Source: Octopus sinensis (Eukaryota). From it: a stretch of 64,000 nucleotides of DNA. The notes under the pieces are model-generated. The model made no database searches. It was not told the DNA's origin and was given only the letters and a program-made list of their open reading frames with translations. The stretch covers positions 20,770,001 through 20,834,000 of the forward strand of contig NC_043004.1 in NCBI RefSeq assembly GCF_006345805.1, read 5' to 3'. Shown piece by piece: positions 7,570 through 64,000 of this stretch. Both the position numbers and the translations under genes were made by a program. Every line of letters starts with the position of its first letter. The stretch's first letter is position 1.

Positions 7570-8370
7570 CCACCACTGTTACACTGTTACATTGTGTTGC
7601 GCTGTGATGCACTGTGTTACATTGAGTAAAACCATGCAGACGTGCGTTGTACTGTTACACGTTGCACTATCGTGCATCGTACAGTAATGACTTCTACTGA
7701 CATGCACAATGATGCAGTATGCTTAAGTGTATTAAGATGCCCTCAGCTGTATTGTAATGCAGCGCATATAGAGCATGTAATGTGGTATGGTTGCCGTTAC
7801 GTTCTGAGTTCACATTCCGCCGAAGTCGACTTTGCCTTTCATCCTTTCGGGGTCGATTAAATAAGTACCAGTTACGCACTGGATTCGATGTAATCGTCTT
7901 AATCCGTTTGTCTGTCCTTGTTTGCCACCTCTGTGTTTAGCCCCTTGTGGGTAGTAAAGAAATAGGTATAGTATGGGCCCAGCATAACTTAATTTAGCAT
8001 AGTGCATATTGTACAATTTAATGAACAATATAGTTTAAAATATTGCAGTGTAAAGCAACAGGGCAGTAAACAGCTCTACTGTGTAGAGCAGAACAACACC
8101 GCACAGTAGAGTGTAGTGTAGGGCAGTAATAGCATTGCTCAATGTAACATAATGAAAATATACTAGTGCAAACCTGTGCAGTATGGCGTAATTATGTGCA
8201 ACACTATGATGCTTCATATTAAACTGATGCATCATACTGCAGCCAAGTACCAAAATTCAGTATGGTGCAATACCATGTAGCATTGTAGTGCTACTTGTTC
8301 AGCGCAACGCAATATAGTGCAGCAAACTGCTGATTAGTGGAGCACAGGACAGCATAGTTTAAGACGCTAC
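7570..8370. repeat. Highly decayed 5-bp-period satellite (TGTAG/TGCAC/TACAT-like), interrupted by a SINE-B
   Basis: Visible 5-nt periodicity (e.g. CACAG TAGAG TGTAG TGTAG GGCAG) on both sides of 7795-7968. Confidence 0.6.
7795..7968 (+). mobile_element. SINE family B (5'-truncated), tail type 1
   Basis: GTTCTGAGTTCACATTCCGCCGAAGTCGACTTTGCCTTTCATCCTTTCGGGGTCGAT core and tail ..GCCCCTTGTGGGTAGTAAAGAAATAGG. Confidence 0.85.
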
Positions 8371-9466: not shown

Positions 9467-11158
9467 TCTTTATTGCCCACCAGGGGTCCAACATAGAGGG
9501 GACAACACATCACATGTGGGGACATAGAACGACAAATCAAAAAAACAAACGTAGGACAAAGATGAATGATAACATGAAAATGAATTAATGGAATGGGGCC
9601 ACTGAGTCTCACTTCTGGGCGACTCCATTTCGACCCTTTATCACCTCTTGTACCTCGTTCCTTCTAGAATGTCAGCCCCATATAGTTCTAGTATCTCCTC
9701 GTACGTCGAAAATCCCGGTAGCTCCTTCCTATCCATCTCTATCTCCCACCACCTATATCCACTTTTATGTTTCAGTACTCTTTCTAACTGTTTCTCCGTA
9801 GGTAGCACAGAACGGTGCAGCGTCTGAACATTATCAAACCCTTCAGTTCTCAACCCCTTAGAGTCATCCCACTTACACAAATCCTCGTCTGAATCGCCAA
9901 TCACGATTACTAGACATGTCTTTTTCGTTTGGGGGGAGGGAGTTTGAGATTGCTTGTGTGTATGTTTCTTTTTGTTTTCGTGTCGGAGGGAAATAGGTAG
10001 GCTCGGTGTCTGTGAGGGAAGGGTGGGTCTGAGAGGGTATGGGTGGAGTAGGTATGGGTTGGTGTGGGTTGAGGTTCAGAGTTCAAATTACTTGCCTTCT
10101 TTCTTTTTTTCCCCCGCCTATCACTTTCAATGCTTCTTCTGTTAGTTTCTCCTCCTCTTTATCTTTTATCCCTGCTGGTTCGTTTGCTTTCTTTGACTGT
10201 TCTTCCACTTTTTTCTCGGGCGGTGAAGAGCAATCCACTCTAATATGGCCCTTTAGACTACATTTGTAGTATGTTGGAAGTCTGCCCTGTACCTTGACCC
10301 TCATCTCTGTTTCATCAAACAAGACCATCTCTGCTATCTTTTCCAAGGATTACGCTGATGCCTGCACAGTCATCTCACATCTGGTTCCCGTACCCTGGAG
10401 CACTGCTATATCGTTCTCACTTCCTTTGAGAACTGCGGCCGCTACCCAGGCCACATCTACTTCGGGTGGAATACCTTCAAGTTTAATACTTCTGCCCATA
10501 TAAGTGGGCAACAACACCACTTCGTCCTTTATTGTCTTTGCTGCCTGTTTCTTTGCGTTTTGTTCTTTTGCGAACCTCACCTCCACTGTAACAAATCTCG
10601 TTCTTCTCCCTACAAAGACTATATCCTGCCACATTGACCTTAGTACTTTTTCTATTTGGCTTGTATTTATGTTTTCAGTCCTGCCCGCTTTCGTTGAGAA
10701 TGTTTTGTATGTAACTGTTTTCTTTCTGATTCCTTCCAACATTTCCTTTGGAGGGATACAACTCCGAGTTGTACCCCTCTCTACAGGTCAAATTTTTAAA
10801 ATTACTGATTCTCCTAATCAATCTCCTCTTCCTCTTGTCTTGTCACTTCCGCGAAGTTCTCCTTTTTTTTTCATATTTCTTAATTATTTCATCTATTTTT
10901 CCTACTGTTCTAAGCAGTTCTTCTTCTGACGACGATAGTTCAGACCCACTAAGGTTTGAAAAAAACATCCTCCATTGCTAACTCACCTTAAAAAGGAGAG
11001 AAAGCGCAAACAAATTGCTGCAAAGCAGCACAAAAACAATTAGCAATGTGTTTTAAAAAAACACTGACACAAAACAAAACGATGTTAACATTGTGAAAAG
11101 GACCGCACACCTCAAAAAACACCGGAACCGTGCTGGCGTTTCAGCCAGCTTGCAGCCT
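9467..11158 (-). mobile_element. ORF1-only (HAL1-like) derivative of a Tx1/L1-clade non-LTR retrotransposon
   Basis: 5' UTR, then a gag-like ORF1 with a zinc knuckle, then directly a 3' UTR ending AATAAAGAA. No endonuclease or RT sequence is present within the 1.7 kb. Confidence 0.65.
9641..10975 (-). pseudogene. Disrupted retrotransposon ORF1 (gag-like, CCHC zinc knuckle)
   Basis: ATG at 10975 (MEDVF..). Joins track ORFs 10350-10742, 10083-10346 and 9641-9904 across stops and frameshifts. The knuckle YYKCSLKGHIRVDC is Cx2Cx4Hx4C with the first C mutated. Confidence 0.7.
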
Positions 11159-15989: not shown

Positions 15990-18525
15990 TACACTAAACC
16001 AAGAAGTAGAACTCTTTTAGCAGACGTCAATACTATCTGAAGATTTGACTTTTCGTGGGTGACAACACTATCTGAAGGGTTATATATATCTCTGGTGGGT
16101 ATTGACACTATCTGATAAAGTAGCCCTCTGAAGAGGTAAAACTTTAAAAAATATTGACAGCATTTAAGGAAGTACATTTTTGATGGATGCTAACACTCTC
16201 TGTACAGGTAGGCCTTTGGAAGGGTGTTGCCTTGATCTGAAGAGGTAGACTTCAGCTGGATGTTTGCACTTTCTGAAAAGGTAAGTAGGTCTCTGATGGA
16301 TGCTAACACTGTTTGAAGCAGTTCATCTCCATTGGGTGTCAATACTAACTTGGGAGATGATGATGATACCTGGAGAAGTAGTACTCTGGGGTGTGATGAT
16401 AATCTGAAGAAGCAGACCTCGTCTGATGGGTACCAAGAATATTTGAAGAGGTAAGCCTTGCATGGGAGTCAACATTTTCTCAGGAGGCAGAGCTCAGGTG
16501 GGTGTAGGCACTATCTCAAGAGGTAGATCACTGATGGATGTAGATACTACATAGGAACATATAACTCTGATGGGTTTTGATACTATCTGAACAGAAGTGC
16601 TATATTTCTGATTAGTACCAAAGTAACTATAAACCTGAAGAAATATAACTTTGATACATATCGACATTATCAGAAGTATTGTACTACTACTCCTTGAAGA
16701 TGTAGATCTCTGATGATTATCAAATCTATATGAAGAAGTAGACCTCTAATGCATGTCAAGAGAATCTAAAGATATAGGGTTCTGATGGCTCTTCACATTA
16801 TCCAAAGTAGTAGACCATCTATAATGGGCACCAGCTCTATCTGAAGAGGTAGTTCAAGATAGGTGTCAGTGTTCTCTGAAGAGGTACACCTCTGTTGTAT
16901 TTTAATACTATCTTGTGTAAAACCTCTGATGGGTTCCTACTCTATTTGAATGTTTTGGCATCAGCAATACAAGTAAGGGTAAATCTTTGATGGAAGTGGA
17001 TATCTAGACCTCTTCTAATGTGCATTGACACTATCAGAAAAAATATACCTCTGACAGGTATTTTATCTATCTAAACAGGCAGACTTCTGATGAGTGTCTA
17101 TACTATCTGAAGGAGGAGGTTTCTGATGGTTTTCTAAGGTGCCTGATTGGAGTCTAAGTGAAGAAGTAAACGATGACTGTTGACATCATCTGAAGTGTAG
17201 ACACCATCTGGTGTTGTCAGCATTATTTATATAGGCAGACCACCTTTGATGGGTGGCTTTATTATGGATAAAGGTAGATGGTAGATTTCTGATGGGTTTT
17301 AGGACTATTAAAACAATTAAATTCCTGATGTGTTGTCAATATTGTCTGAGGAGTGTTGAAATTAACTGAACATGTCTGAGAGATGTTGACACAGAAGAGT
17401 CACACGTTAAAATCTGTAAAGTGAAGCCTCTGATGCAAAGACACATGGCTTAGTGGTTAGGGTATTGCACTTATCATTGTAAGATTGCAGTTTAAATTAT
17501 GGATCAAGAAATGCTGTGTTGTCTTGAGTAAAACAGTTCATGTTGCGCTATTTAGTAAGGTAGCAAAATTGAGTTTTCCTGTATGGACTGACATCCTGGC
17601 CAGTTGGAATTATATACACTACAGAATCAAGGAAACTGGCCTTATGAGCCTATGGCTTGGGAATGACATTTGATTTTGTTTTTGGAGGCTTCTGATATTT
17701 GTCAACATTATCTGAAGTGGTTGATTATTTGATACTATCAGGGGTAGAACTCTCATAGTTATTAACACTATAGGAACGGGTGGTCCTTTGTTGAGCATCA
17801 TCTATATTTGAAGTATTACTCAGTAATGGGTACTGATACTAGCTAAAGAGGTAGACCTTTGATAAATGTCAACAGTATCTAGAGAAGTGCGCTTCTGATA
17901 TGTGTTGACATTATCTTATGAAGTATCTGACGGTTGTTGACACAATCTGAAGAGATACCACTCTGAGTTGTGCTGACACTATTGGAATAAGTAGATATTT
18001 CATGTGTATTAACTCTCTCTGAAGAAGGTAAACCTTGGATAGAATGCAATACTTTGAAGGGTAGATGTCTGATGTTTGTCAAAAAAGTAGACATTTGAAA
18101 GGTGTCAACACTTTCTGAAGAGATAGATCTTTGAAGGATGTCAGCACTATCTGAGGTATAATATGATCATCTGCACTGTCTCAAATGTAGATGTCTACTG
18201 GTTGTCAACATTATCTGATGATTTAAATATTTGACAAGATATATATTTGATATTATCCAGAGAGGTAGACATGTGAAATTTATCAACACTATCCAAAGAG
18301 ACAGATCTCTGATGGGTATTGATGCTGTCTGAAGTGATAGATCTCTGATGGATGTTGACATGCTAGAGTGCTAGATCTCTGATGGGTCTTGGTACTATCT
18401 TGAGAGGTAGGCTTCCATATTTTTCCCCACTACCTGAAGAGTAAGACTTCTTTTCATGGGTATCAACACTTGTCTGAATAAGTAGACCACTGACAGATGT
18501 TGATACTATCTGAATAGTAGACTTA
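15990..18525. repeat. Ancient, highly diverged ~36-bp minisatellite (consensus approx. GATGGGTGTTGACACTATCTGAAGAGGTAGACCTCT)
   Basis: The motif ACTATCTGAAG/AGGTAGA/CTCTGATGG recurs at roughly 36-bp spacing with many indels; interrupted by a SINE fragment near 17430-17560. Confidence 0.85.
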
Positions 18526-25860: not shown

Positions 25861-26169
25861 AGTAAATCTAAATCCTTGTGATATAAATACCACACTACCT
25901 AAGATTTATCTGCATACACTTAAAATATATCTACTGACTCTTGTAGCAGAGTTCATGGGATTTCTCATAATTCACCTAATGTATATATTTTACTTAACAA
26001 AAAAAAACACACACACACACACAAAAAAGCAAAAGAAGTGTGTAATGAACAACAAAACATTGCTATAAGATATCTGCATTAAACACGTACAGACACACGT
26101 GTATGTGTGTGTGTGTGTGTTTCATTCATTTTTCTCTTGCTTTTTCATGCTACTTATGTGCAAACATGC

Positions 26170-26415
26170 ATAATATATATATATATATACACACACACAC
26201 ATATATATACATATATATACACACATATATATATATAAGTATGCATGCATATATATATATATATATATACATATAAATATATATATACATGTATATACAC
26301 ATGAATATATATATGTACGCATGCATACATACATATATATATATATATTATATATATATATATATATATGTGTGTGTACACATGCATACATACATATATA
26401 TATATATATATATAC

Positions 26416-26494
<79 letters not shown>

Positions 26495-26520
26495 CATACA
26501 TATATATGTATGTATAGAGA
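26170..26520. repeat. (TA)n/(TACA)n compound microsatellite
   Basis: Read directly. Confidence 0.95.
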
Positions 26521-27084
26521 TACATGCACACACGCGCATTGTGCATTGCCAGTCCTGCAAAAAATCCACAGAAAAATGGTAGAGAGCAAAAGAGAAAAAA
26601 AATGATGATAATAATAATGAAGTCAATACTTGCAGCATGTTTTAGAAATCTTTTTTGAACACTGCAGCTATCCAATCCTAAGGTTCTGCATTAATATTTT
26701 TCTTAATCTTTATTTATTTAATTTTTTTTTTTGTTCCATAAGATATAAAGAACAGAAAAGCTAAGAAATATTAATGGAAGATCCATTAGAATGGTTTCAC
26801 AAACCTTCCAGAATCTCTGTCTACTAATCAAAAAGTATGTCTATTTCCAACTGCTTTCTTGTCGGCCAAGGAAAATTAAATATTTATTCAGATTTTTTAA
26901 GTATTTTTCTACACTCACTTCGTATTTATATTATGTATTATGCCATTGTTGTTGCTGTTGTTGTTGTTATTATTATTATTATTATTATCATTATTACTAT
27001 TATTATTATTTGTAAACATAAAGTCAAACACATGTTCAATGTATTATTGTTGTACCTATCTACTTCGCAATATGTGTGCATGTT

Positions 27085-27650
<566 letters not shown>

Positions 27651-28885
27651 AACGAAGAAGACGGGGAATAAAATACTGAAATACTGATATTTTGATTTCT
27701 ATCTTCCTCAGTGACACACAGACAGATATTTTTAGTGATAAACTTAACTTAACTAAATGCATCTAAAGTGCATTTTTTTCTTCTTTTTTCTTAATTAAAA
27801 CTGATATATATGTATATGAAGATATATGTTGGTATGCCTATATATGAGCATATTTACATACATACATAAATGCATGTGTATATATATATATATATACACA
27901 TGCATTTATGTATGTATGTGTATATGTATATATGTGTATATATAGTAACAGTATTAATAAAATAAGAGGTGGAATAGACACACACACATACTGGCACATA
28001 CACACACACACATATACAGACGCACACACACGAGGTTCACTCTAGTGAAAGCAGATAAAGCAAGGGAGATAATTATTTCCTCAAAAACAAGGCAGGATAT
28101 AAAATTTGAATTTAAAATGTGAGAATTAAATGGGAAAATGTGTACAATATTTATGTATTAAATTGTTTTTGTTTTGTTTACTTATTACAAAGTTCATCCA
28201 ATTTCTAGTCACTGGTCATTGTATATAGAACTAGTTGATTGTTTTAGAAATTGTGAGCATAAAATAACATGTGGCTTATTCATTAGACATTTTATTATGG
28301 CTGTTGATATAATGAGAGGTAGCTATCTCCTTGCAATGTCAGGCAGAAATAGGAATTTGAATTTGAAATCAAGGACTATAAAAGGATACAGAGTTCACAG
28401 GTATAAATATAATTTAATTTAAATTCTTTTCTTTTTATTATTATCTATCATGAAATTCTTGCAATTTCCTACTAGTAGTAACATATAAAGTAAAATTTCA
28501 TCCTTTTTAAGAATCATCAGCATGATTTTACCTTACTGATATAAGATGTATTGCAAAGAGAGGCATTAGAATATAATTAAAGATGAAATTAATCATAGAC
28601 TGAAAGAAGTTCATAGAAATTTGAAATCCTTTTCTTCATAGAATGTTGTAAGTTTAAGAAAATATTTATAGTGATTAAGTGTTGAGTAATAGCAGTCTCC
28701 AGGAAACTTTCTAACTTGTGAAAGTGTTTTAGGGTAGTCAATATTTACAATATTAGTTACAAATGGTTTTACAAGCCTTCATAATACTTGCTTAGGTGTA
28801 GATATCTTTTCCCTGCTGTTATCATCTATATTCATCCTGTAGTCAAATGAGCTTCTATTCATAAACTAATGTTCTCTAATACCAG

Positions 28886-39131: not shown

Positions 39132-41478
39132 CACCTATCAATAAGTATTTTTTATCAAGCATATGTCAAGGTGTACTTAGTGTAGTTTTTAATGCTGATT
39201 TCAAATATACAATTAGTATTTTGACGTCCCGTACTTTTTTCAAGATGAGAAAGTTTTTTGGTTTTAGCTCATGCATTATACAGAAATTCCAAGTAATGAA
39301 GTGTACGCATGTATTTCATTTACCTCATTGAAACATACCTTTAAAATAAACTACATTATTCATTGCTGCATTATTATGTATTATTTCATCATCTTAAATT
39401 AACCAATCAAATTTTGTCTGAGGAAATAGGTATTTCAACATCTCAACTTGTCCAGTCATAATTGGTCTGATGAAATATTTCCTCATCTCAAATTCAATAT
39501 GAGTATAACCGTTTGTATTTATTTCCTTACTTGTTTTATAGTATTAACAATATCAAGACAATATAGTAATCATCCTGAAGTGTTTTGCTATGTCTGTGGA
39601 CAATTTATTGTGAAAGCTCAAAAATGTACAATAACACCAGAGATCAAGAAATTTATAAGCAATACTTTGACTGACCTCTTGTAGATCAGGAAAAGTTATG
39701 GGCACCACATTTAATCTGCTCAGCTTGTTCAAATGGCATACATAACTGGTTCAATTATAAGAAGTCCATGCCTTTTGCCACTCCAATGATATGGAGGGAA
39801 CTGAAAGGCAGTTTTAATGACTGTTAATTTTGCAAAGTAAGTGTCACAAGATTTTTTATGAAGAATAAATACAAAATTGTGTATCCCAATTTGGATTCTA
39901 TAATGAAACCTGTGCCTCACAATGGAAGCCTGCCAATTCCAGTTCCACCAGATGATGGTATTGAAACGTCAGATGATGATGCTAACTGTCATGTTAGTGC
40001 TGCTGAGGAAGATTATGTGGTTGATGACGATAGCTTTGAACCTCAGAAATTTTCCCAAGCTGAACTGAATGACCTTGTCAGAGACCTATCCCTCTCAAAA
40101 GATAAAGCAGAACTGTTGACATCAAGACTTAAGGAGAAATATCTTCTAGAGCACAGTGTTTGTATAACCTATTTTTGGCAGAGAAATGTGGTTCTACAAA
40201 CACGTTTTACTGTTAAAGGCCCCCTTTGCTTCTGCAGTAGCATCGATTGTCTTTTTGAATGTTTATCACAAAATCATGATTCTGCAGACTGGCGTTTGTT
40301 TATTGACTCTTCAAAACGAAGTTTAAAAGCTGTACTTATCCATAATGGTAATTTGAAGTCCTCCGTTCCTGTTGCACATTTCGCTCATCTTCATGAACCA
40401 TGAGAATATGAAACTTTACTTCATGCCATTACCTATGAAAGATACTCATGGAAAATATGTGAAGATTTAAAAGTCATTGGAATTTTAATGGGAATGCAGT
40501 TAGATTTCACAAAATACTGTTGTTTCTTATGTCTGTAAGATTGTCGGGCAACTGACAGGCATTATTCAGAATCAAATTGGCAGACAAGAATATCGTACCA
40601 GATAGGACTGTCCAGCATCAAGAATACACTTCTTGTAGATCCATATAATGCTCTGTTGCCTCCTTTGCACATAAAGCTTGGACTGATGAAACAGCTTGTA
40701 AAGACACTAGGGAAGAGAAATGCCAGAGGGTTTGAGTATATTGTAGAAAAGTTTCTCAAAATCACACAGACGAAGTTGAAAGAGAGTATCTTTGAGTACT
40801 TCTCTAATTTGGAGTTCGACAAAGACGTTAGCTTCAAGACAGCACTGGATGAACTGGAGCTGCCTGCAATGCTTTCAATTGGATCTGTGAGAATTTCTTT
40901 GGCAATAAGAAGGCAATGAACTACAAGGATGGCATCAAGAATCTTCTGAAATATTACTCAGCAATGGGTTGTCGTATGTCACTGTAGACTCCCATCTGGA
41001 TTTCTTCACAGATAACCTTGGAGCAGTGTCTGATGAACATAGTGAAAGATTTCACCAGGAAATTAGTGCTATGGAGAAGCAGTATCAAGGCTTCTGGAAT
41101 GACATTATGCAGGCTGACTATTGCTGGACACTTTACCATAATCAACCAAATCAGGAACACTGCAGGAAATCCAAATCACAATGTTTCTAACTCTGTTGTT
41201 CTAACTTTGTCTGTTTTTTGTCTGACCCATTTTTGTGTGTATTCATTCTTTATAGAATGAGTGATGATTTTTAATCCAATAAACTCATTTACTTTCTTAA
41301 AATAATATGTACTTATTTGCTACATTAAGGATTTCATATATACAAATATGTATCTACTGAAAAACTGATACATACTGCATACAAACAGTGAAATTTTGAA
41401 ATCAGTATGAAAAATTAGTCTTAAAATGTTGGTTTGCATTCATAATGAGTGTAATACATTTAATTTTGTTGATCAGTG
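39132..41478 (+). mobile_element. Full-length decayed Chapaev3-like (CMC superfamily) DNA transposon
   Basis: Ends CAC..GTG with TAA on both sides (39129-39131, 41479-41481). Transposase remnants at about 39555-41190 include FCYVCG, PMIWRE, QAELNDLVRDL, DWRLFIDSSKRSLKAVL, PPLHIKLGLMKQ and GAVSDEH.ERFHQ..DYCW. Superfamily assignment is from motif recall. Confidence 0.8.
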
Positions 41479-47276: not shown

Positions 47277-47924
47277 CGTCTCTCACTCCCTTCTATATAT
47301 ATATATATATATATTTACACACACACACACTCACACACATACACACAACAAACACAATTATGAAATGATAGATATGGGCCTGGCCTATGAGTAGACTCAT
47401 GGTAGGGCTTGTCATTGTATGAGATAGTGATCATGTGCCCTCCAATGCTCCAAGGGGTACAGGAGGAACAAAATCTATGATATTGACAAACGAATGAGCA
47501 TGCTTGTATATGGTTGCTTGAAGTTGCAAGAAATAGCAGCCAAATCTATCTCAAATGACACTCTACTGCCTTTGCAAAGCAGAAGTTTAGTAATGTTATC
47601 CTGGATTCCCTGGGCAAAGGAAGAAATAGAATGGACATGGTAGGATTAACAGTGATCGTAGGACTGTTGCATCAAGGCTGACCTAGGGTTAACCATAAAG
47701 CAACAACAATTTTACTGATGTAAAAGAAATAAACAAGACAGCTTTAATGGTTACACATACTAGAAACAACAGCCAAAGCTCACTTTATTGTTTTAAGAAA
47801 AGGAAATGACATTACATAGTTTTGCTTTAAATACCCTTAGAAAAATGGTATGGTCATTGGTAGGATGCCTTTAATTTTGCAGAGTGTGTATGTCTTTGTG
47901 TGGCTCAACAACAACAAATTACCC

Positions 47925-47944
47925 CCTCCTCCTCCTCCTCCTCC

Positions 47945-47975
<31 letters not shown>

Positions 47976-48117
47976 CATCATCATCCTCATCATCATCATC
48001 ATCATCATCATCCTCATCCTCATCCTCATCCTCATCCTCATCCTCATCCTCCTCCTCCTCATCCTCCTCCTCATCATCATCATCATCATCATCCTCCTCA
48101 TTATCCTCCTCCTCCTC

Positions 48118-48148
<31 letters not shown>

Positions 48149-48375
48149 CATCATCATCCTCATCATCATCATCATCATCATCCTCATCCTCATCCTCATC
48201 CTCATCCTCATCCTCATCCTCATCCTCATCCTCCTCCTCCTCCTCCTCATCATCATCATCATCATCATCCTCCTCATTATCCTCCTCCTCCTCCTCATCA
48301 TCATCATCCTCATCCTCATCCTCATCCTCATCCTCATCATCATCATCATCCTCATCCTCATCCTCATCATCATCC

Positions 48376-48406
<31 letters not shown>

Positions 48407-48543
48407 CATCCTCATTATCCTCCTCCTCCTCCTCCTCATCCTCATCCTCATCCTCATCATCATCCTCATCATCATCCTCATCATCATCCTCATCCTCATC
48501 ATCCTCATCCTCATCATCCTCATCCTCATCATCATCATCATCC
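47925..48543. repeat. ~620-bp (CAT)n/(CCT)n trinucleotide array adjoining an RTE-type tail (48544-48655, minus)
   Basis: Read directly; it is the source of the poly-S/H/D/E ORFs. Confidence 0.95.
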
Positions 48544-48879
48544 TTTACCATCTGTTTTCCATGTTGGCATGGGCTGGACAGTTTGACCAGAGCTGGCAAG
48601 CAGGAGAAGTGCACTAGGTTCCAGTCTGATTTGGCTTGGTTTCTAAGGCTGGATTGTTGTTTCTAAACCTTAATATGCACATGTCATCATTTTATTATTC
48701 CCGAAAGATAACTTGGTATCTTATATTCTTTTACCTTTCAACATTCAGATTACTCTTTCAAATATAAAGCTTATATATTCATATTTGTTTTGAATTAATC
48801 ATACATTATTACATAGCTTTGAGATTTCCTTGATATGATTGTTTATACAGTTCTATATTTAAGAGATGAGGAATTATTC

Positions 48880-53185: not shown

Positions 53186-54645
53186 TATATATACATATGC
53201 ATATATAAAACAGGATGTATGTGTGTACATGTATATACAAATAAATATATACACACATATTTGTATATATGTATGCATATGCTCACACACACTGCACACA
53301 TATGTGTGTGGTGTATTTTTTTAATGTATTATGACATGCCACCTCTCTGCCATGACCCACTCCTATTTTCCTTACATTCCTCCAAACTGAGATTTCCCAT
53401 TGTTCATGCCTCCATCCATGTTCAACATTCACTGCATTCACTTCTGTTCTTATATCTACGGTCTGTCACTCCCCTTTCACACTCTTGCAAACCTACCACC
53501 CCACGTAGTCATTCTTAATTTTCTCTCCTTGATCTCTCTTTATCTACCTTCTTGTATCTCGATGGTATGCCTGATCTCCAGCTAAGAAAATAATGATAAG
53601 TAAGAAAATAAATACAAAAAGCAAATATTACCTGTTGTTATCCACCTTTCCATAATAGGGAAAAAAATATCTATCAAAGATCTTTGAAATACTTGGAAGG
53701 AATTTTCTGCCAGAACACTGATACCATCAGACATATACTAAAGTCTCAGTAAAACTAGACAAATTAATGGTACAAAATCTAATATAGGGTTGAAAACTGA
53801 GAATAAGAGTTGAAGGAAGTGAGTATAATGCAGTAAATCAATTACTTTATAGCCTGCCTATTCTAGATAGTGAAAAAATTTGGAGAGACATTAAGATTAG
53901 GCATGAAGCTTTGGGGTTAAGCATGCCTACTTCCACCACTATGGGAAAGGAATTACATAATTTCGGTAAGTTACTGCATTCTTGAGTACACTCTAATTCA
54001 CATTGTATTAGCTGAAATCTAAACAATAGTAATAAAGGTAAAAAAAAAATTAAGATCCCTTCACTCGATCCAACTCCCCCTCTTTCTCCCTCTCTTTCAT
54101 GCTCATTTATTATTGTCACTTGTTCATTCATTTATCTAATTTTGTCACAGTTTGGCCAACCGATAAACTCTTGGTTATAGATCTAGTTAAGAATTTCAAA
54201 TGCCCAATTCTATCTCATTATTATCATCAATATTCTCTCACACCAGCAGCCTGAGTTTTTGCTGTTTCACAGTGTGCCCAACCTTCCCACCCCACCACCT
54301 GTACCGGAAGTCTTCATCAGATGATGAAGGACTTTCATAACTGGTAAAATGAGGCAAGACTTGCCCAACCTATTGAGGTAATGGGGAAAAATAAGCATAA
54401 AATAAGAACAACAACGATGATGATGATATTAATGGTGATGGTGGGAAATAAACTAAATTATACAAAATTAAGTGTCATTACACCAGTAATGAACTCATGT
54501 GTGATGCCTTAGTAAATTGGTTTTTAATGGTAATAAGAGAAATGAAGAATTTATTGAAAGGATTTCACAAGTAGAAATAGAGGGAACTGTGTGTATAAAT
54601 GAATGATTTAGTAAATAATATAAGAATAATATAACTCAAAATATG

Positions 54646-54747
54646 TTTGTTTTTGTCTTTTGCAGGTAAGTGCTTGATAAATTGCTTTTCGTGAAATTAT
54701 ATTTAGTGCAAAGGTTAGAAAAAGATGTATTATGCCAACAGGTAAGT
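54646..54747 (+). other. Candidate recursive splice site with a 76-nt RS-exon
   Basis: TTTGTTTTTGTCTTTTGCAG|GTAAGT (54665/54666) and a second CAG|GTAAGT at 54741/54742; stops in all three frames. Confidence 0.45.
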
Positions 54748-55214
54748 CTAACATTTTATTTTTATCTAAAATCGATGTTTTAACGAGGACTTTTTATATC
54801 TAGAAAATATTTTAGTACAAAGTAGCAAATGATTGCTAGAAAGGCTAGAGGCCAAGAAATTCATTTGTTAATGAGATTAGCAAAGAAATCTCCACCACAG
54901 AAGACCTTGCTCTGTCAAAAAACTGATAGATTACCTAACTAAGAATCTCTTTTACTAATCATGATATTTAGGATTAATGACTATTTTTATTGAAAATTTC
55001 TCATTCTATAAAACGTTTCTCACTTTTAATTTTCTATTTCTGATTCAGTGGTTTAAGATGGAAATAAAGTGTAATAAAACAAAATGAAAATAATTTATTT
55101 ATTTAAAAATGTTTCCAAAAGATAAATTAATGTTCATTATATATCTTTACATTTTGCATGCTATTTTCACTAAATCACCAAATATGTGTATATGAAAGAA
55201 TGAATGAATACATG

Positions 55215-55253
<39 letters not shown>

Positions 55254-56224
55254 CTATGTGCATGCATGTATGTGAAAAGAGCAAGCAAAAATGCTGTGAC
55301 TGCAATCAAATTTTAACAATGGCTCTAACTTAACCAGAAATAAGAAAAAAATATATAGTTAATTATGTATATGTATATGTGCGTGTGTATATATAAGTGC
55401 ATTATTATTTTTGAGTGAGAGAGCTCTGCATGCCATGTAGTTGACACTGGGGTACCAATATACGAAGCCCCCATATACCCATCATGTCTACCTGTCTGAT
55501 AAGGGTACACCAAGCACATGCATCACAACCATATGTGTGCAACATGGTGACTTTGTATCAAGATAAACAGCACATGACCTTCCAGGTGGGACCCAGTTAG
55601 AATTTTCTTCAGGTTGAGTAACTAATCTCACTTAAAAGGTCCCTGAATGAGGGTTTAAGGATGATGAATGAAACACTCATGTTTTCAAAAGTGAATCATT
55701 CAAACCCCAAAGAATTACTCACATGGCTACTGAGATCAACATTGCCTTTCATCCTTTTGGGTTGACAAAATAAGTACCATTTGAGTTCTGGGGTCGATGT
55801 AATAGACTTACTCCTCACCCAAAACTGCTGGCCTTGTGCCAAAATTTTAAATCAATATTATTATTATTATTTAAAGCAACTTGACTAGGCTCAATGTGAC
55901 TAAAGGTTTGTGGACTTGTAAAAGAAACCTCTCTCATTTGGGCTGAATAGAGAAACACAGGAAATCGAAGATGACTTATTGAAAATGGGCTGCTATTGGT
56001 CAAGATGCATTATATGGTGTTGTTAGGGGTAAGATTAGCGATTCAGCAACATCAGGTTTGGTAGGAAGGAGAATTTCCAGGATCGTGTGGCTGGATAGGA
56101 AACTGATAGCATCTTGGTGTCCGGGAGCTGACCGGAACTGGGGCAGCGAATGTGTATGTAGGAGTGTGCGTATACGAAATGTATAACTGTATGGATATGG
56201 GGAGTTATTGGTTGATGCATTTGT

Positions 56225-61461: not shown

Positions 61462-64000
61462 AAGAAAGAGGGATAGAGAGAGAGTTTTGCTTTTGTGGTG
61501 TAGCCCTAAGTAGTATAGCCAGATATATGGCATATGGGTAATCATACAGTGTGCTGTGTGGAAATCTTGGGGCACTTTATAGACATGTTCTTCAGATCTA
61601 ATATTTTGTATGATTATAATTATACTTCACTGTTCAGTTAAGTTTGGTATGCTTGTTGCTTTAATTAATCAAAAACATTTCAGCAACAACCAACCCATCT
61701 TTTTCTCTTAAGTATTATCATGTACATAACAAGGTAATATACACAATAGTCTTAGAATTTTTAAGATTGAAAATTGACTGTTATTTCAAAGCCTAGTACC
61801 TACAGGTCTACTATGACCACAACTTTTATATATATATTTTTTTTATATTTCAATGGAGTCAGTTCTTTAATGTTCCTCAATATTTTTTCTTTAATATCCA
61901 GAGGTCTGACACATTGCTAACCTCGTATTATTGTGTTGATAGCTACTTAACTATCATGTGTATATGTATGAAGAAAAAATAAATGAGTTTCTGAATTTTA
62001 GTAATCTTTGTTAAATCTGTTACTAATTTCATTTCATTTGCTATGAGATCCTCTTATAGTATTATCTAAAGAATTTTCTTTTAAATTGTTTTCTTCTCAG
62101 AAACTTTTCGTAACTTAAAATTTTAAATTTCTGAATAAAGAAAATAAATAATTAAAAAAGTTTCTTTGGACTCTTTTATAACATTTAATATCATTTCTTC
62201 ATTTTACTTTTTAAATTGTCTTTCCATATCTTTTTATAATGTATGTTTCTTGGGGCACTTTATATAAAATCTTTATAGGTATGTTCATCAGATCTAAGAT
62301 TTTATACAATTATAATTATATTTGACAATTTGACATAGAATTTAAGGTTTCATATAATAGGTGTTGGGGGTGAAAGGATTGTTTATGGTAATTTATTTTT
62401 TGATTTTTTTGTTTACATTACTGCTTAACTGTTATTTTGCTACGTTTTTTTTTACTCTCCCTACAATTATCATGTCTAGATGCAACAAAAGCAGAAAAGA
62501 ACTTGGCAAGGCAAGGGAGATGCTATGCACCATCAAAAGGTTGTACAAGATAACATCCAGGGTATTATCAAAATGGTGATCTGATGCATGCTTTATCATG
62601 GTGGTGTCAAAGTGACTTTCAGGGTTGATATATGAGGAGACTTGTAATATATTCAAGCTGGTTATCTGAAGCTTGGTTTGTCATGGCAGTATTGAGTGCA
62701 TTTCAAGTCTGATGTATGATGATACTCTTGTGCTCATGGTATTTTTTCAACAATTTGTCTTAATTGTCTTAATTTAGTCTGTTCATATTTGCTTTATCAC
62801 TCTCCATTTGGAATTATTCAATTTCTTCACTGCTACCTTATAGACATTTTCCCCACTGCATTTCAGGTTCATCATTGGCATTTTTGTATGCCTTAATTAT
62901 GTTAATTTATAAACTTGCTTTCTGAGAATAGTTTAAACTTTTATTAAATAATTAATTTTTAGTTTTGATACTTTCTGAGTTTTGCCTCAATAACAAATAT
63001 TTTTTGTTCATAAAATTGGACTGCCTGTAAAAAGTGTGGACTACCAAGAAAACTGCAAAATGTGTATTTTTCTCAGTTCAGTTAATTAAGAATATTATTG
63101 CTCCTATGCTCATCATCGTCGTCGTCGTCATCATCATAGTTATTTAATACAATCAACTGTTGGAATATAATATATATTGGCTACTGACTTTTCACACATC
63201 CTATAATACAAACTCACCTAGCTGTTCTGGAACTTATAAGAATGTCTTGCTTCTTCACAGAAGAGAGTGTAAGTTTTGGAAGCATGCTAAATGCATTCAG
63301 GTTATCATAGGAAAAAGAAAAGAATTCTGAGTTTTCTAGTAAAAGAGAAAAGGAAAAAAATAACATATTTTCATCCAGTGAGTTACTTGTCCATACTTAT
63401 GAGAAACTCTAACTAAATAGAAGCTCAGAAAATACTTCCATATGTTTGTAGAAAGTGAGACAGGAAAGCAAGAAGATAGAAAATTAGAAGCTAGATGGAT
63501 AGTAGGGGTAAAGAACGGTATGCAAAGAATCTGGAGAGTGAAGTGTGAAATGGGAAAAGTCAAGTGTTAAGTTTTAAAGTGAGATGGTAGAATTTAAGAG
63601 GTATCAAAACACCTACTATTGTGTTGATACCAAGGTGTGATTATCTGTGTGTTAAATCTTCAAGGTGGTTCTGCTCAAGATCACAGTTTGGAGAGTTTGG
63701 ATATTTCAAGTATTTTCCCACTGAAACTGTAATTGAAGTCACTGGCTTTCAAAGCCAGATATAGCTCGAAAATTTAGTCATGTATCACTTTTTGATTTAT
63801 AAAAGTGTGATAGATACTTGCACTAGTGTAGCCAGAGTGTGTGCCACCTAGGATGGCCCTTCCATTTTCTGCCCCTGGACCCCACAAAAATACATATTAC
63901 CTACAGCAATAGCCTACAACTTGTGATAACTTGACTTAAAATTTTCCTTCCATTACCTTTATATATCACTTGATTGTATTGCCTTGGTTGAGATTTTGTA

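What the first reader, a model, noticed from the sequence alone, without database searches (positions are those of the whole stretch)
54646..54747. Recursive-splicing signature: strong 3'ss fused to GTAAGT, with a 76-nt stop-containing RS-exon
Seen: branch-like TAAC about 30 nt upstream, a 20-nt T-rich tract, CAG immediately followed by the consensus donor GTAAGT, and a second CAG|GTAAGT 76 nt later. The intervening segment has stops in all frames and lies in unique DNA. Established: this is the architecture of ratchet points/RS-exons in long Drosophila and vertebrate introns. Inference: a giant + strand intron spliced recursively. I am not aware of recursive splicing being characterised in cephalopods. 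Caveat: a few AG|GTAAGT motifs are expected by chance in 64 kb; the tract quality and paired donor are what stand out.
Basis: partly seen in the sequence, partly recalled or inferred. Interest (0 to 1): 0.7.

Follow-up and report, generated by a model that had tools for sequence, protein, structure and literature searches.

The report
Candidate recursive splice site, unproven
A near-perfect "acceptor fused to donor" splice signal, followed 76 bases later by a second perfect donor, is really in the sequence and is far too good to be chance, but without RNA data or related genomes I cannot tell whether it drives stepwise (recursive) intron removal or simply marks a small non-coding exon.

Summary
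A TAAC lies 31 nt upstream. A 14/16-pyrimidine tract with TT at -5/-6 follows. CAG|GTAAGT sits at 54665/54666 and a second CAG|GTAAGT at 54741/54742. The 76-nt segment between them has stops in all three frames.

It is not chance. It is the best acceptor-donor fusion and the best exon-like unit on either strand of the window. An order-3 Markov null over 4,000 window-equivalents gave a fusion this strong twice and the full composite never. The region has no other copy in the window and no unusual RNA fold.

Every sequence-level feature of a ratchet point with a cryptic RS-exon is met except one: the downstream donor is already maximal. The regenerated donor therefore cannot be the stronger one, as it usually is in flies and mammals, so partial inclusion of the 76-nt exon is expected.

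No host gene, strand of transcription, junction evidence or orthologous sequence could be obtained. The taxon (cephalopod) could not be verified.

My estimates are:
- real recursive use: about 0.45
- ordinary non-coding, 5'UTR or lncRNA exon: about 0.25
- non-functional relic: about 0.25

If real, it is a new member of a known kind. Interest is modest.

The parts
54632..54635 (+). Branch-point-like TAAC. The A at 54634 lies 31 nt upstream of the G of the acceptor AG (54665), and no AG lies between it and the acceptor.
   Evidence: Read directly. The match to yUnAy is 4 of 5, and use as a branch point is inferred.
54646..54665 (+). Polypyrimidine tract plus CAG acceptor (TTTGTTTTTGTCTTTTGCAG), with TT at -5/-6.
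   Evidence: The acceptor ranks 3rd of 7,586 AGs. Only 2 of 7,587 AGs have such a tract plus YAG. TT at -5/-6 is found in 196/197 fly ratchet points (bioRxiv 10.1101/006163).
54666..54671 (+). GTAAGT immediately after the acceptor. This is the donor that would be regenerated once an upstream exon is ligated here (ratchet-point donor).
   Evidence: It is the top-scoring fused AG|GT of the window at 28.5 bits, against 23.9 for the next.
54666..54741 (+). 76-nt candidate RS-exon. It has stops in all three frames, its length is not a multiple of 3, its GC is 0.30 (flanks 0.27-0.28), and a single ATG at 54725 stays open to the exon end.
   Evidence: It is the best exon-like acceptor/donor pair on either strand.
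54742..54747 (+). Second donor, GTAAGT preceded by CAG. It is fully complementary to the U1 5' end and is followed by a U-rich stretch.
   Evidence: ties for rank 1 of 7,177 GTs. Donors this strong occur about 7.5 times per strand-Mb under the null.

Best explanation
This is a real exon-definition unit on the + strand with the architecture of a recursive-splicing exon. U2AF/U2 would bind the TAAC, T-tract and CAG at 54632-54665, and U1 would bind the donor at 54742, defining the 76-nt segment as an exon. An upstream exon is then ligated to 54666. That ligation regenerates a donor (xxx|GTAAGT) at the new junction. In a second step either the regenerated donor is used, which removes the 76 nt together with the downstream intron (recursive, 'zero-nucleotide' outcome). 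Or the donor at 54742 is used, which leaves a 76-nt stop-containing, frame-shifting exon in the RNA.

Both donors share the same intronic GTAAGT, and the downstream one has the optimal CAG. I therefore expect a mixture rather than a fully silent ratchet point, with the included form being a poison or 5'UTR isoform.

What is shown: the motifs, their strength, their non-random co-occurrence and the non-coding nature of the segment. What is inferred: + strand transcription, location in a long intron, and any actual use of either donor.
For: - The exact consensus (Y)nNCAG|GTAAGT is present with TT at -5/-6 (consensus in PMC2773006; TT rule in 10.1101/006163).
- A second perfect donor lies 76 nt downstream. 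Most fly ratchet points have a 5' splice site less than 100 nt downstream, and RS-exons are about 50 nt (PMC6224609; PMC8605326).
- The segment is out of frame with stops in every frame, as described for cryptic RS-exons (PMC8605326).
- It is the best fused site and the best exon-like unit in the window.
- Under the null a fusion this strong appears 5e-4 times per window and the composite appeared 0 times in 4,000 windows.
- None of the 41 splice-flanked open segments screened across the 64 kb, nor any reading frame around the site, matches a known protein. This is compatible with a very long intron.
- In every invertebrate examined in PMC2773006, ratchet-point motifs are 4- to 22-fold enriched on the sense strand of large introns over the complementary strand.
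- A very strong regenerated 5' splice site is the condition under which recursive use escapes EJC repression (PMC6224609).
Against: - There is no evidence that the + strand is transcribed or that the window lies in a gene.
- No orthologous sequence was available, so the hallmark conservation of ratchet points is untested.
- The RS-exon donor is maximal, whereas ratchet-point donors are generally stronger than their RS-exon donors. The competition model then predicts substantial inclusion (PMC8605326).
- There is only one such site in 64 kb, and no excess of fused sites on + over -.
- The + strand excess of strong donors (19 against 7) is largely explained by a G-rich degenerate repeat at 16.1-16.6 kb.
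- My PWMs are approximate metazoan values written from memory, not trained on this species.
Confidence: 0.45

Rival explanations
1. This is an ordinary expressed exon: an internal 5'UTR exon, possibly carrying the start codon at 54725, or a lncRNA exon. It is spliced in conventionally, and its first six bases happen to be GTAAGT. The regenerated donor is not used, for example because it is repressed by the exon junction complex.
For: - It has a strong acceptor and a maximal donor at a typical exon length.
- The single ATG has A at -3 and stays open to the exon end.
- In humans 3.6% of annotated exons regenerate a 5' splice site and 93.8% of these are constitutive (PMC6224609).
- The downstream donor cannot be outcompeted on strength (PMC8605326).
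Against: - A full GTAAGT at an exon start is rare without selection: from the base composition alone I estimate about 3e-4 to 1e-3.
- There is no open frame through the exon, so it cannot be an internal coding exon.
- Exon GC (0.30) barely differs from the flanks.
- No downstream + strand segment with a protein match would continue an ORF.
- A very strong regenerated 5' splice site is the case in which repression fails (PMC6224609).
Confidence: 0.25
2. The site is non-functional. It is a chance co-occurrence, or a relic not transcribed on the + strand or not recognised by the spliceosome. A relic could be a decayed copy of an exon-intron fragment or of a mobile element that carries splice signals.
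For: - No transcription or conservation evidence of any kind was obtained.
- A second-tier fused site on the - strand at 10986 sits beside retroelement-like ORFs, so such motifs can ride on repeats.
- Copy number outside the window is unknown.
Against: - Under the null, a fusion this strong appears 5e-4 times per window. A second maximal donor within 200 nt has probability about 1.3e-3. The product is of order 1e-6 per window, well below one expected in a genome of a few Gb.
- No other copy exists in a repeat-rich window.
- The two CAGGTAAGT 9-mers have unrelated flanks, so they are not a local duplication.
Confidence: 0.25
3. This is a decoy or poison exon. It is recognised by exon definition but engages the flanking splice sites unproductively. 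Its role would be to promote intron retention or NMD as a regulatory brake, rather than to subdivide a long intron.
For: It uses the same signals as above. Its content is stop-containing and frame-shifting. The decoy-exon concept is described for large introns in PMC7373989, which I saw only as an abstract.
Against: Nothing distinguishes it from the two readings above at the sequence level, and the fused GTAAGT is not required by this model.
Confidence: 0.05

Closest known systems
Drosophila intronic ratchet points with cryptic RS-exons (Ubx, kuz, Bx; Hatton 1998, Burnette 2005, Duff 2015, Joseph 2018/2021)
   Same: It has a fused acceptor|donor with the consensus (Y)nNCAG|GTAAGT, TT at -5/-6 and a prominent pyrimidine tract. 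The short downstream exon (76 nt) is closed by a second donor. The exon content is non-coding and out of frame.
   Different: The downstream donor is as strong as a donor can be, whereas in flies the ratchet-point donor is usually the stronger one. Host intron, use and conservation are unknown. The lineage is different and is said to be a cephalopod, which is unverified.
Vertebrate RS-exons in long neuronal genes (CADM2 and others; Sibley 2015), the 'binary splice switch'
   Same: The RS-exon carries premature stops, and the outcome is decided by competition between the regenerated and the downstream donor.
   Different: Nothing is known here about an upstream exon, a promoter or the host gene. 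Vertebrate cases were defined from saw-tooth RNA-seq and junction reads, which are not available.
Annotated (mostly constitutive) RS-exons repressed by the exon junction complex (Blazquez 2018)
   Same: It is an exon that would regenerate a 5' splice site at its upstream junction.
   Different: Those exons are largely coding and included. This one has no open frame, and its regenerated site is the full consensus, which is the class least well repressed.

Membership tests
Intronic ratchet point with cryptic RS-exon (fly type) | [quoted passage not shown] | tested here: met
   TTTGTTTTTGTCTTTTGCAG|GTAAGT at 54646-54671. It is the only YYYYNCAGGTAAGT in the window against 0.05 expected and the top fused score. 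The consensus is as quoted in PMC2773006.
Intronic ratchet point with cryptic RS-exon (fly type) | Prominent pyrimidine tract with TT at -5/-6 (196/197 fly ratchet points) | tested here: met
   Positions -5/-6 are TT, with 14/16 pyrimidines at -20..-5. The rule comes from 10.1101/006163.
Intronic ratchet point with cryptic RS-exon (fly type) | A second 5' splice site less than about 100 nt downstream, defining a short exon | tested here: met
   CAG|GTAAGT at 54741/54742, 76 nt downstream. The feature is described in PMC6224609 and PMC8605326.
Intronic ratchet point with cryptic RS-exon (fly type) | Regenerated (ratchet-point) donor stronger than the RS-exon donor | tested here: inconclusive
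   Both have intronic GTAAGT and the RS-exon donor has the optimal exonic CAG. The regenerated donor's exonic part depends on an unknown upstream exon and can at best tie. Exceptions exist, for example hth (PMC8605326).
Intronic ratchet point with cryptic RS-exon (fly type) | Exon content non-coding, out of frame or stop-containing | tested here: met
   76 = 3x25+1, with stops in all frames.
Intronic ratchet point with cryptic RS-exon (fly type) | Lies inside a long intron of a gene transcribed on the same strand | not testable with these tools
   No annotation or RNA data were available. None of the 41 splice-flanked open segments screened across the 64 kb matched a protein, and the site's neighbours gave none either. 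That fits a long intron as well as intergenic DNA.
Intronic ratchet point with cryptic RS-exon (fly type) | Splicing intermediates: junction reads into the site, saw-tooth coverage, lariats from the regenerated donor | not testable with these tools
   No read data were available.
Intronic ratchet point with cryptic RS-exon (fly type) | Motif conserved in related species while the exon body drifts | not testable with these tools
   Exact 22-mers of the first junction are absent from the metagenome and GTDB collections, and those of the second junction from the metagenome collection. No ORF-based route to orthologous contigs was found.
Expressed / annotated RS-exon (Blazquez 2018 sense) | Present in mature mRNA | not testable with these tools
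   No transcript data were available. No protein in the 5.8-billion collection matches translations of the segment or its read-through.
Expressed / annotated RS-exon (Blazquez 2018 sense) | Regenerates a 5' splice site above the species' 90% threshold at the upstream junction | tested here: met
   The intronic part is the full GTAAGT consensus. The species-specific threshold was not computed.

The most novel reading that the evidence does not exclude
The site is a working ratchet point in a very long intron of a cephalopod gene. That would be the first recursive splice site shown outside insects and vertebrates. It would imply that lophotrochozoans with giant introns use exon-defined recursive splicing. 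Its unusual balance of two equally maximal donors would make the 76-nt poison exon a tunable output.
Probability: 0.35. Interest if true: 0.5.

Novelty: new member of a known kind. Interest (0 to 1): 0.3.

Why it matters
Recursive splicing has been demonstrated in Drosophila and vertebrates. It has been inferred from motif enrichment in a few other insects and sea urchin (PMC2773006). I found no paper on it in cephalopods or other molluscs.

From my own knowledge, cephalopod genomes are large and have many long neuronal genes. A validated site would extend the mechanism to a third major animal branch, and it would give a concrete locus to test with stranded total RNA-seq.

On its own, one unvalidated motif does not change what is known. 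Its value is as a well-specified, cheap-to-test candidate and as a seed for a genome-wide sense-versus-antisense census.

Tried and rejected
1. Orthologous or transcript contigs through ORFs. The exact look-up of the 94-aa ORF next to the site was not on record. A composite of 14 stop-to-stop translations covering 53.8-55.1 kb on both strands found no protein at E<=0.01.
2. Host-gene search. 41 splice-flanked open segments from the whole window were searched as a composite and gave no hit. Pfam on 10 ORFs or candidates gave nothing above the cut-off.
3. Taxon check. The transposon-like ORFs at 39.4-41.2 kb hit a ~560-aa family found in very diverse animals. The best hit is an unnamed Logan contig from DRR639055, and that accession prefix is in no held paper. 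The cephalopod origin therefore stays unverified.
4. Exact 22-mers of both junctions were absent from the metagenome contigs, and the first was also absent from the GTDB genomes.
5. Intronic ncRNA as a strand marker. There was no Rfam family and no tRNA in the window.
6. Strand asymmetry. Strong donors number 19 on + against 7 on -, but four lie in a degenerate G-rich repeat at 16.1-16.6 kb. AATAAA and ATTAAA counts are symmetric. I rejected this as evidence of direction.
7. Structured-RNA explanation. The fold of 54620-54790 has z = -0.12, so I rejected it.
8. Second candidate at 16208/16281 (AG|GTAGGC followed by AAG|GTAAGT 73 nt later). It is part of the same degenerate repeat and has a weak tract, so I rejected it.
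9. Sibley 2015 (PMC4471124) is not held. Its content is cited only through PMC5126111, PMC6224609 and PMC8605326.

Full report
**What is there**

On the + strand the window reads ...tataactcaaaatatg TTTGTTTTTGTCTTTTGCAG|GTAAGTgcttgataaattgcttttcgtgaaattatatttagtgcaaaggttagaaaaagatgtattatgccaaCAG|GTAAGTctaacattttattttt....

- The junctions are at 54665|54666 and 54741|54742, and the segment between them is 76 nt.
- A TAAC sits at 54632-54635. Its A lies 31 nt upstream of the G of the acceptor AG (54665), with no AG in between.
- Positions -20..-5 are 14/16 pyrimidines with 13 T, and positions -5/-6 are TT.
- All three frames of the 76 nt contain stops. In one frame the only stop is the TAA inside GTAAGT.
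- A single ATG at 54725 stays open to the end of the segment.

'Unique DNA' holds within the window only: self-BLAST of 53500-56000 finds no second copy of 53500-55200. The neighbouring 55.2-55.9 kb carries a TG microsatellite and a multi-copy interspersed element.

**Is it more than chance?**

- AGGTAAGT occurs 6 times against 2.46 expected, and YYYYNCAGGTAAGT once against 0.05 expected.
- I scored every AG and GT on both strands with approximate metazoan splice-site matrices written from memory. They are a ranking device, not a calibrated score.
- On that ranking the acceptor is 3rd of 7,586 and both donors tie for 1st of 7,177. The fused site scores 28.5 bits against 23.9 for the runner-up. 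The 76-nt unit is the best acceptor/donor pair on either strand.
- Empirically, 0.1% of 16-mers in the window are as T-rich, and only 2 of 7,587 AGs combine such a tract with YAG.
- An order-3 Markov model was trained on the window with the site masked and run for 512 strand-Mb, which is 4,000 window-equivalents. It produced a fusion this strong twice (5e-4 per window), the full composite never and a relaxed composite once.
- Donors this strong occur about 7.5 times per strand-Mb. Multiplying gives a composite expected of order 1e-6 per window, which is less than one per genome of a few Gb.
- The two 9-mers have unrelated flanks, so this is not a local duplication.

I conclude that the signal is not a chance product of composition.

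**What I could not obtain**

- No RNA data, annotation or related eukaryotic genome is reachable with these tools.
- I tried to reach orthologous or transcript contigs through ORFs that overlap or flank the site. The exact look-up failed, and a composite of 14 translations from 53.8-55.1 kb matched nothing.
- A composite of 41 splice-flanked open segments from the whole window also matched nothing, and Pfam found nothing.
- The window holds no Rfam family and no tRNA that could have marked a host transcript's strand.
- Exact 22-mers of the junctions are absent from the metagenome and prokaryote genome collections.
- The excess of strong donor-like motifs on + (19 against 7) is largely due to a degenerate G-rich repeat at 16.1-16.6 kb that carries AGAGGTA in each unit. 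Poly(A)-signal counts are symmetric. I do not count this as evidence of direction.
- The window is strongly CpG-depleted (observed/expected 0.335). In invertebrates with mosaic methylation this would fit a gene body. That is my own background knowledge and a weak hint only.
- The taxon is unverified. The only informative ORFs belong to a ~560-aa transposon-like family seen in crustaceans, amphibians, insects and arachnids.

**Comparison with what defines recursive splice sites**

- The published consensus of ratchet points is (y)nncag|gtaagt (PMC2773006).
- 196 of 197 fly ratchet points have TT at -5/-6 and a more prominent pyrimidine tract than ordinary introns (10.1101/006163).
- Most are followed by another 5' splice site less than 100 nt downstream, which defines a cryptic exon of about 50 nt. 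[quoted passage not shown]

All of these sequence-level features are met here.

One is not clearly met. In flies and mammals the ratchet-point donor is generally stronger than the RS-exon donor, and in vivo mutagenesis of Bx and kuz shows that the stronger donor largely wins (PMC8605326). Here the downstream donor is the perfect CAG|GTAAGT, so the regenerated donor can only tie, and only if the upstream exon ends in CAG or AAG. Exceptions are documented in both directions: hth is skipped despite a weaker ratchet-point donor, while Ubx-m1 and msi are included despite a stronger one. Exonic elements and prior intron removal also matter. On present knowledge, however, I would expect this 76-nt exon to be included in a sizeable fraction of transcripts rather than to be a silent zero-nucleotide site.

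**Base rates**

- In humans 3.6% of annotated exons regenerate a 5' splice site, and 93.8% of those are constitutive because the exon junction complex represses the regenerated site. Very strong regenerated sites escape best (PMC6224609).
- In flies the balance is the reverse: more than 500 intronic ratchet points against fewer than 50 expressed RS-exons (PMC8605326).
- In all five invertebrates analysed by Shepard et al., ratchet-point motifs are 4- to 22-fold enriched on the sense strand of introns longer than 50 kb. The complementary-strand background is about 0.07-0.12 per 100 kb (PMC2773006).
- No mollusc has been examined, and no held paper links recursive splicing with octopus or cephalopods beyond an incidental mention.

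**Verdict**

The most likely reading is a real + strand exon-definition unit with RS-exon architecture. Its regenerated donor is used in competition with an equally strong downstream donor, yielding both the recursive (skipped) product and a stop-containing included isoform. I put this at about 0.45.

- An ordinary non-coding, 5'UTR or lncRNA exon that merely starts with GTAAGT is about 0.25.
- A non-functional relic or repeat-borne signal is about 0.25. Chance alone is very unlikely, but I cannot exclude a genome-wide repeat or an untranscribed location.
- A decoy or poison-exon role without recursion is about 0.05.

A structured-RNA explanation is rejected (z = -0.12). If real, this is a new member of a known kind in an unstudied lineage, not a new mechanism.

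Noticed in passing
window 39448-41190 (+): Four consecutive ORFs (78, 181, 87 and 73 aa) are the broken remains of a ~560-aa protein with no Pfam domain. The family has more than 2,000 relatives at E<=0.001, found in mantis shrimp, a frog, an aphid, a pseudoscorpion and many unnamed ~2-3 kb transcript-like contigs. The best hit is 70% identical (Logan DRR639055). It looks like a widespread, uncharacterised mobile-element protein.
   Followed up: partly
window about 16080-16620 (+), possibly further downstream: A degenerate repeat of roughly 45-50 nt has units that each carry ...GAAGAGGTA[AG]... and ...CTGATGGATGCTAACAC.... Tandem Repeats Finder does not detect it. It creates several strong donor-like motifs on the + strand and lies at the start of the 16-20 kb stretch with strongly positive GC skew.
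   Followed up: partly
window 10986 (-), next to ORFs 9641-10742 (-): The second-best fused acceptor|donor of the window (ctcctttttaag|GTGAGT, 23.9 bits) lies just upstream of three retroelement-like ORFs on the - strand. The 8-16 kb region also has the highest CpG observed/expected ratio (0.5-0.85), suggesting a younger insertion.
   Followed up: no
window 63218-63335 (-): This is the best exon-like unit on the - strand: acceptor 13.1 bits, donor AG|GTGAGT 11.1 bits, 118 nt, one open frame (NSEFFSFSYDNLNAFSMLPKLTLSSVKKQDILISSRTA). It has no Pfam or protein-database match.
   Followed up: partly
window 47850-48670: An ~800-bp trinucleotide-type low-complexity block reads as long His/Pro, Ser, Ile/Leu or Asp/Glu runs depending on frame. 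GC skew is -0.32.
   Followed up: no
window 26000-28000: A 2-kb block of AT/TA-rich microsatellite has GC 0.206, the lowest in the window.
   Followed up: no
window 55730-55845, with copies near 7826, 11493, 12483, 13198, 29591 and 36994: A short interspersed repeat of about 80-140 nt occurs in at least seven copies at 69-81% identity, in both orientations. A further recurring element gives ORFs with the motif ...FQFPSTKSTHKALVGLRL... at 24.1, 25.2, 45.2 and 49.0 kb.
   Followed up: no
whole window: The overall CpG observed/expected ratio is 0.335. It varies widely, from 0.07 to 0.85 per 2 kb, which indicates heavy historical CpG loss outside the 8-16 kb block.
   Followed up: no
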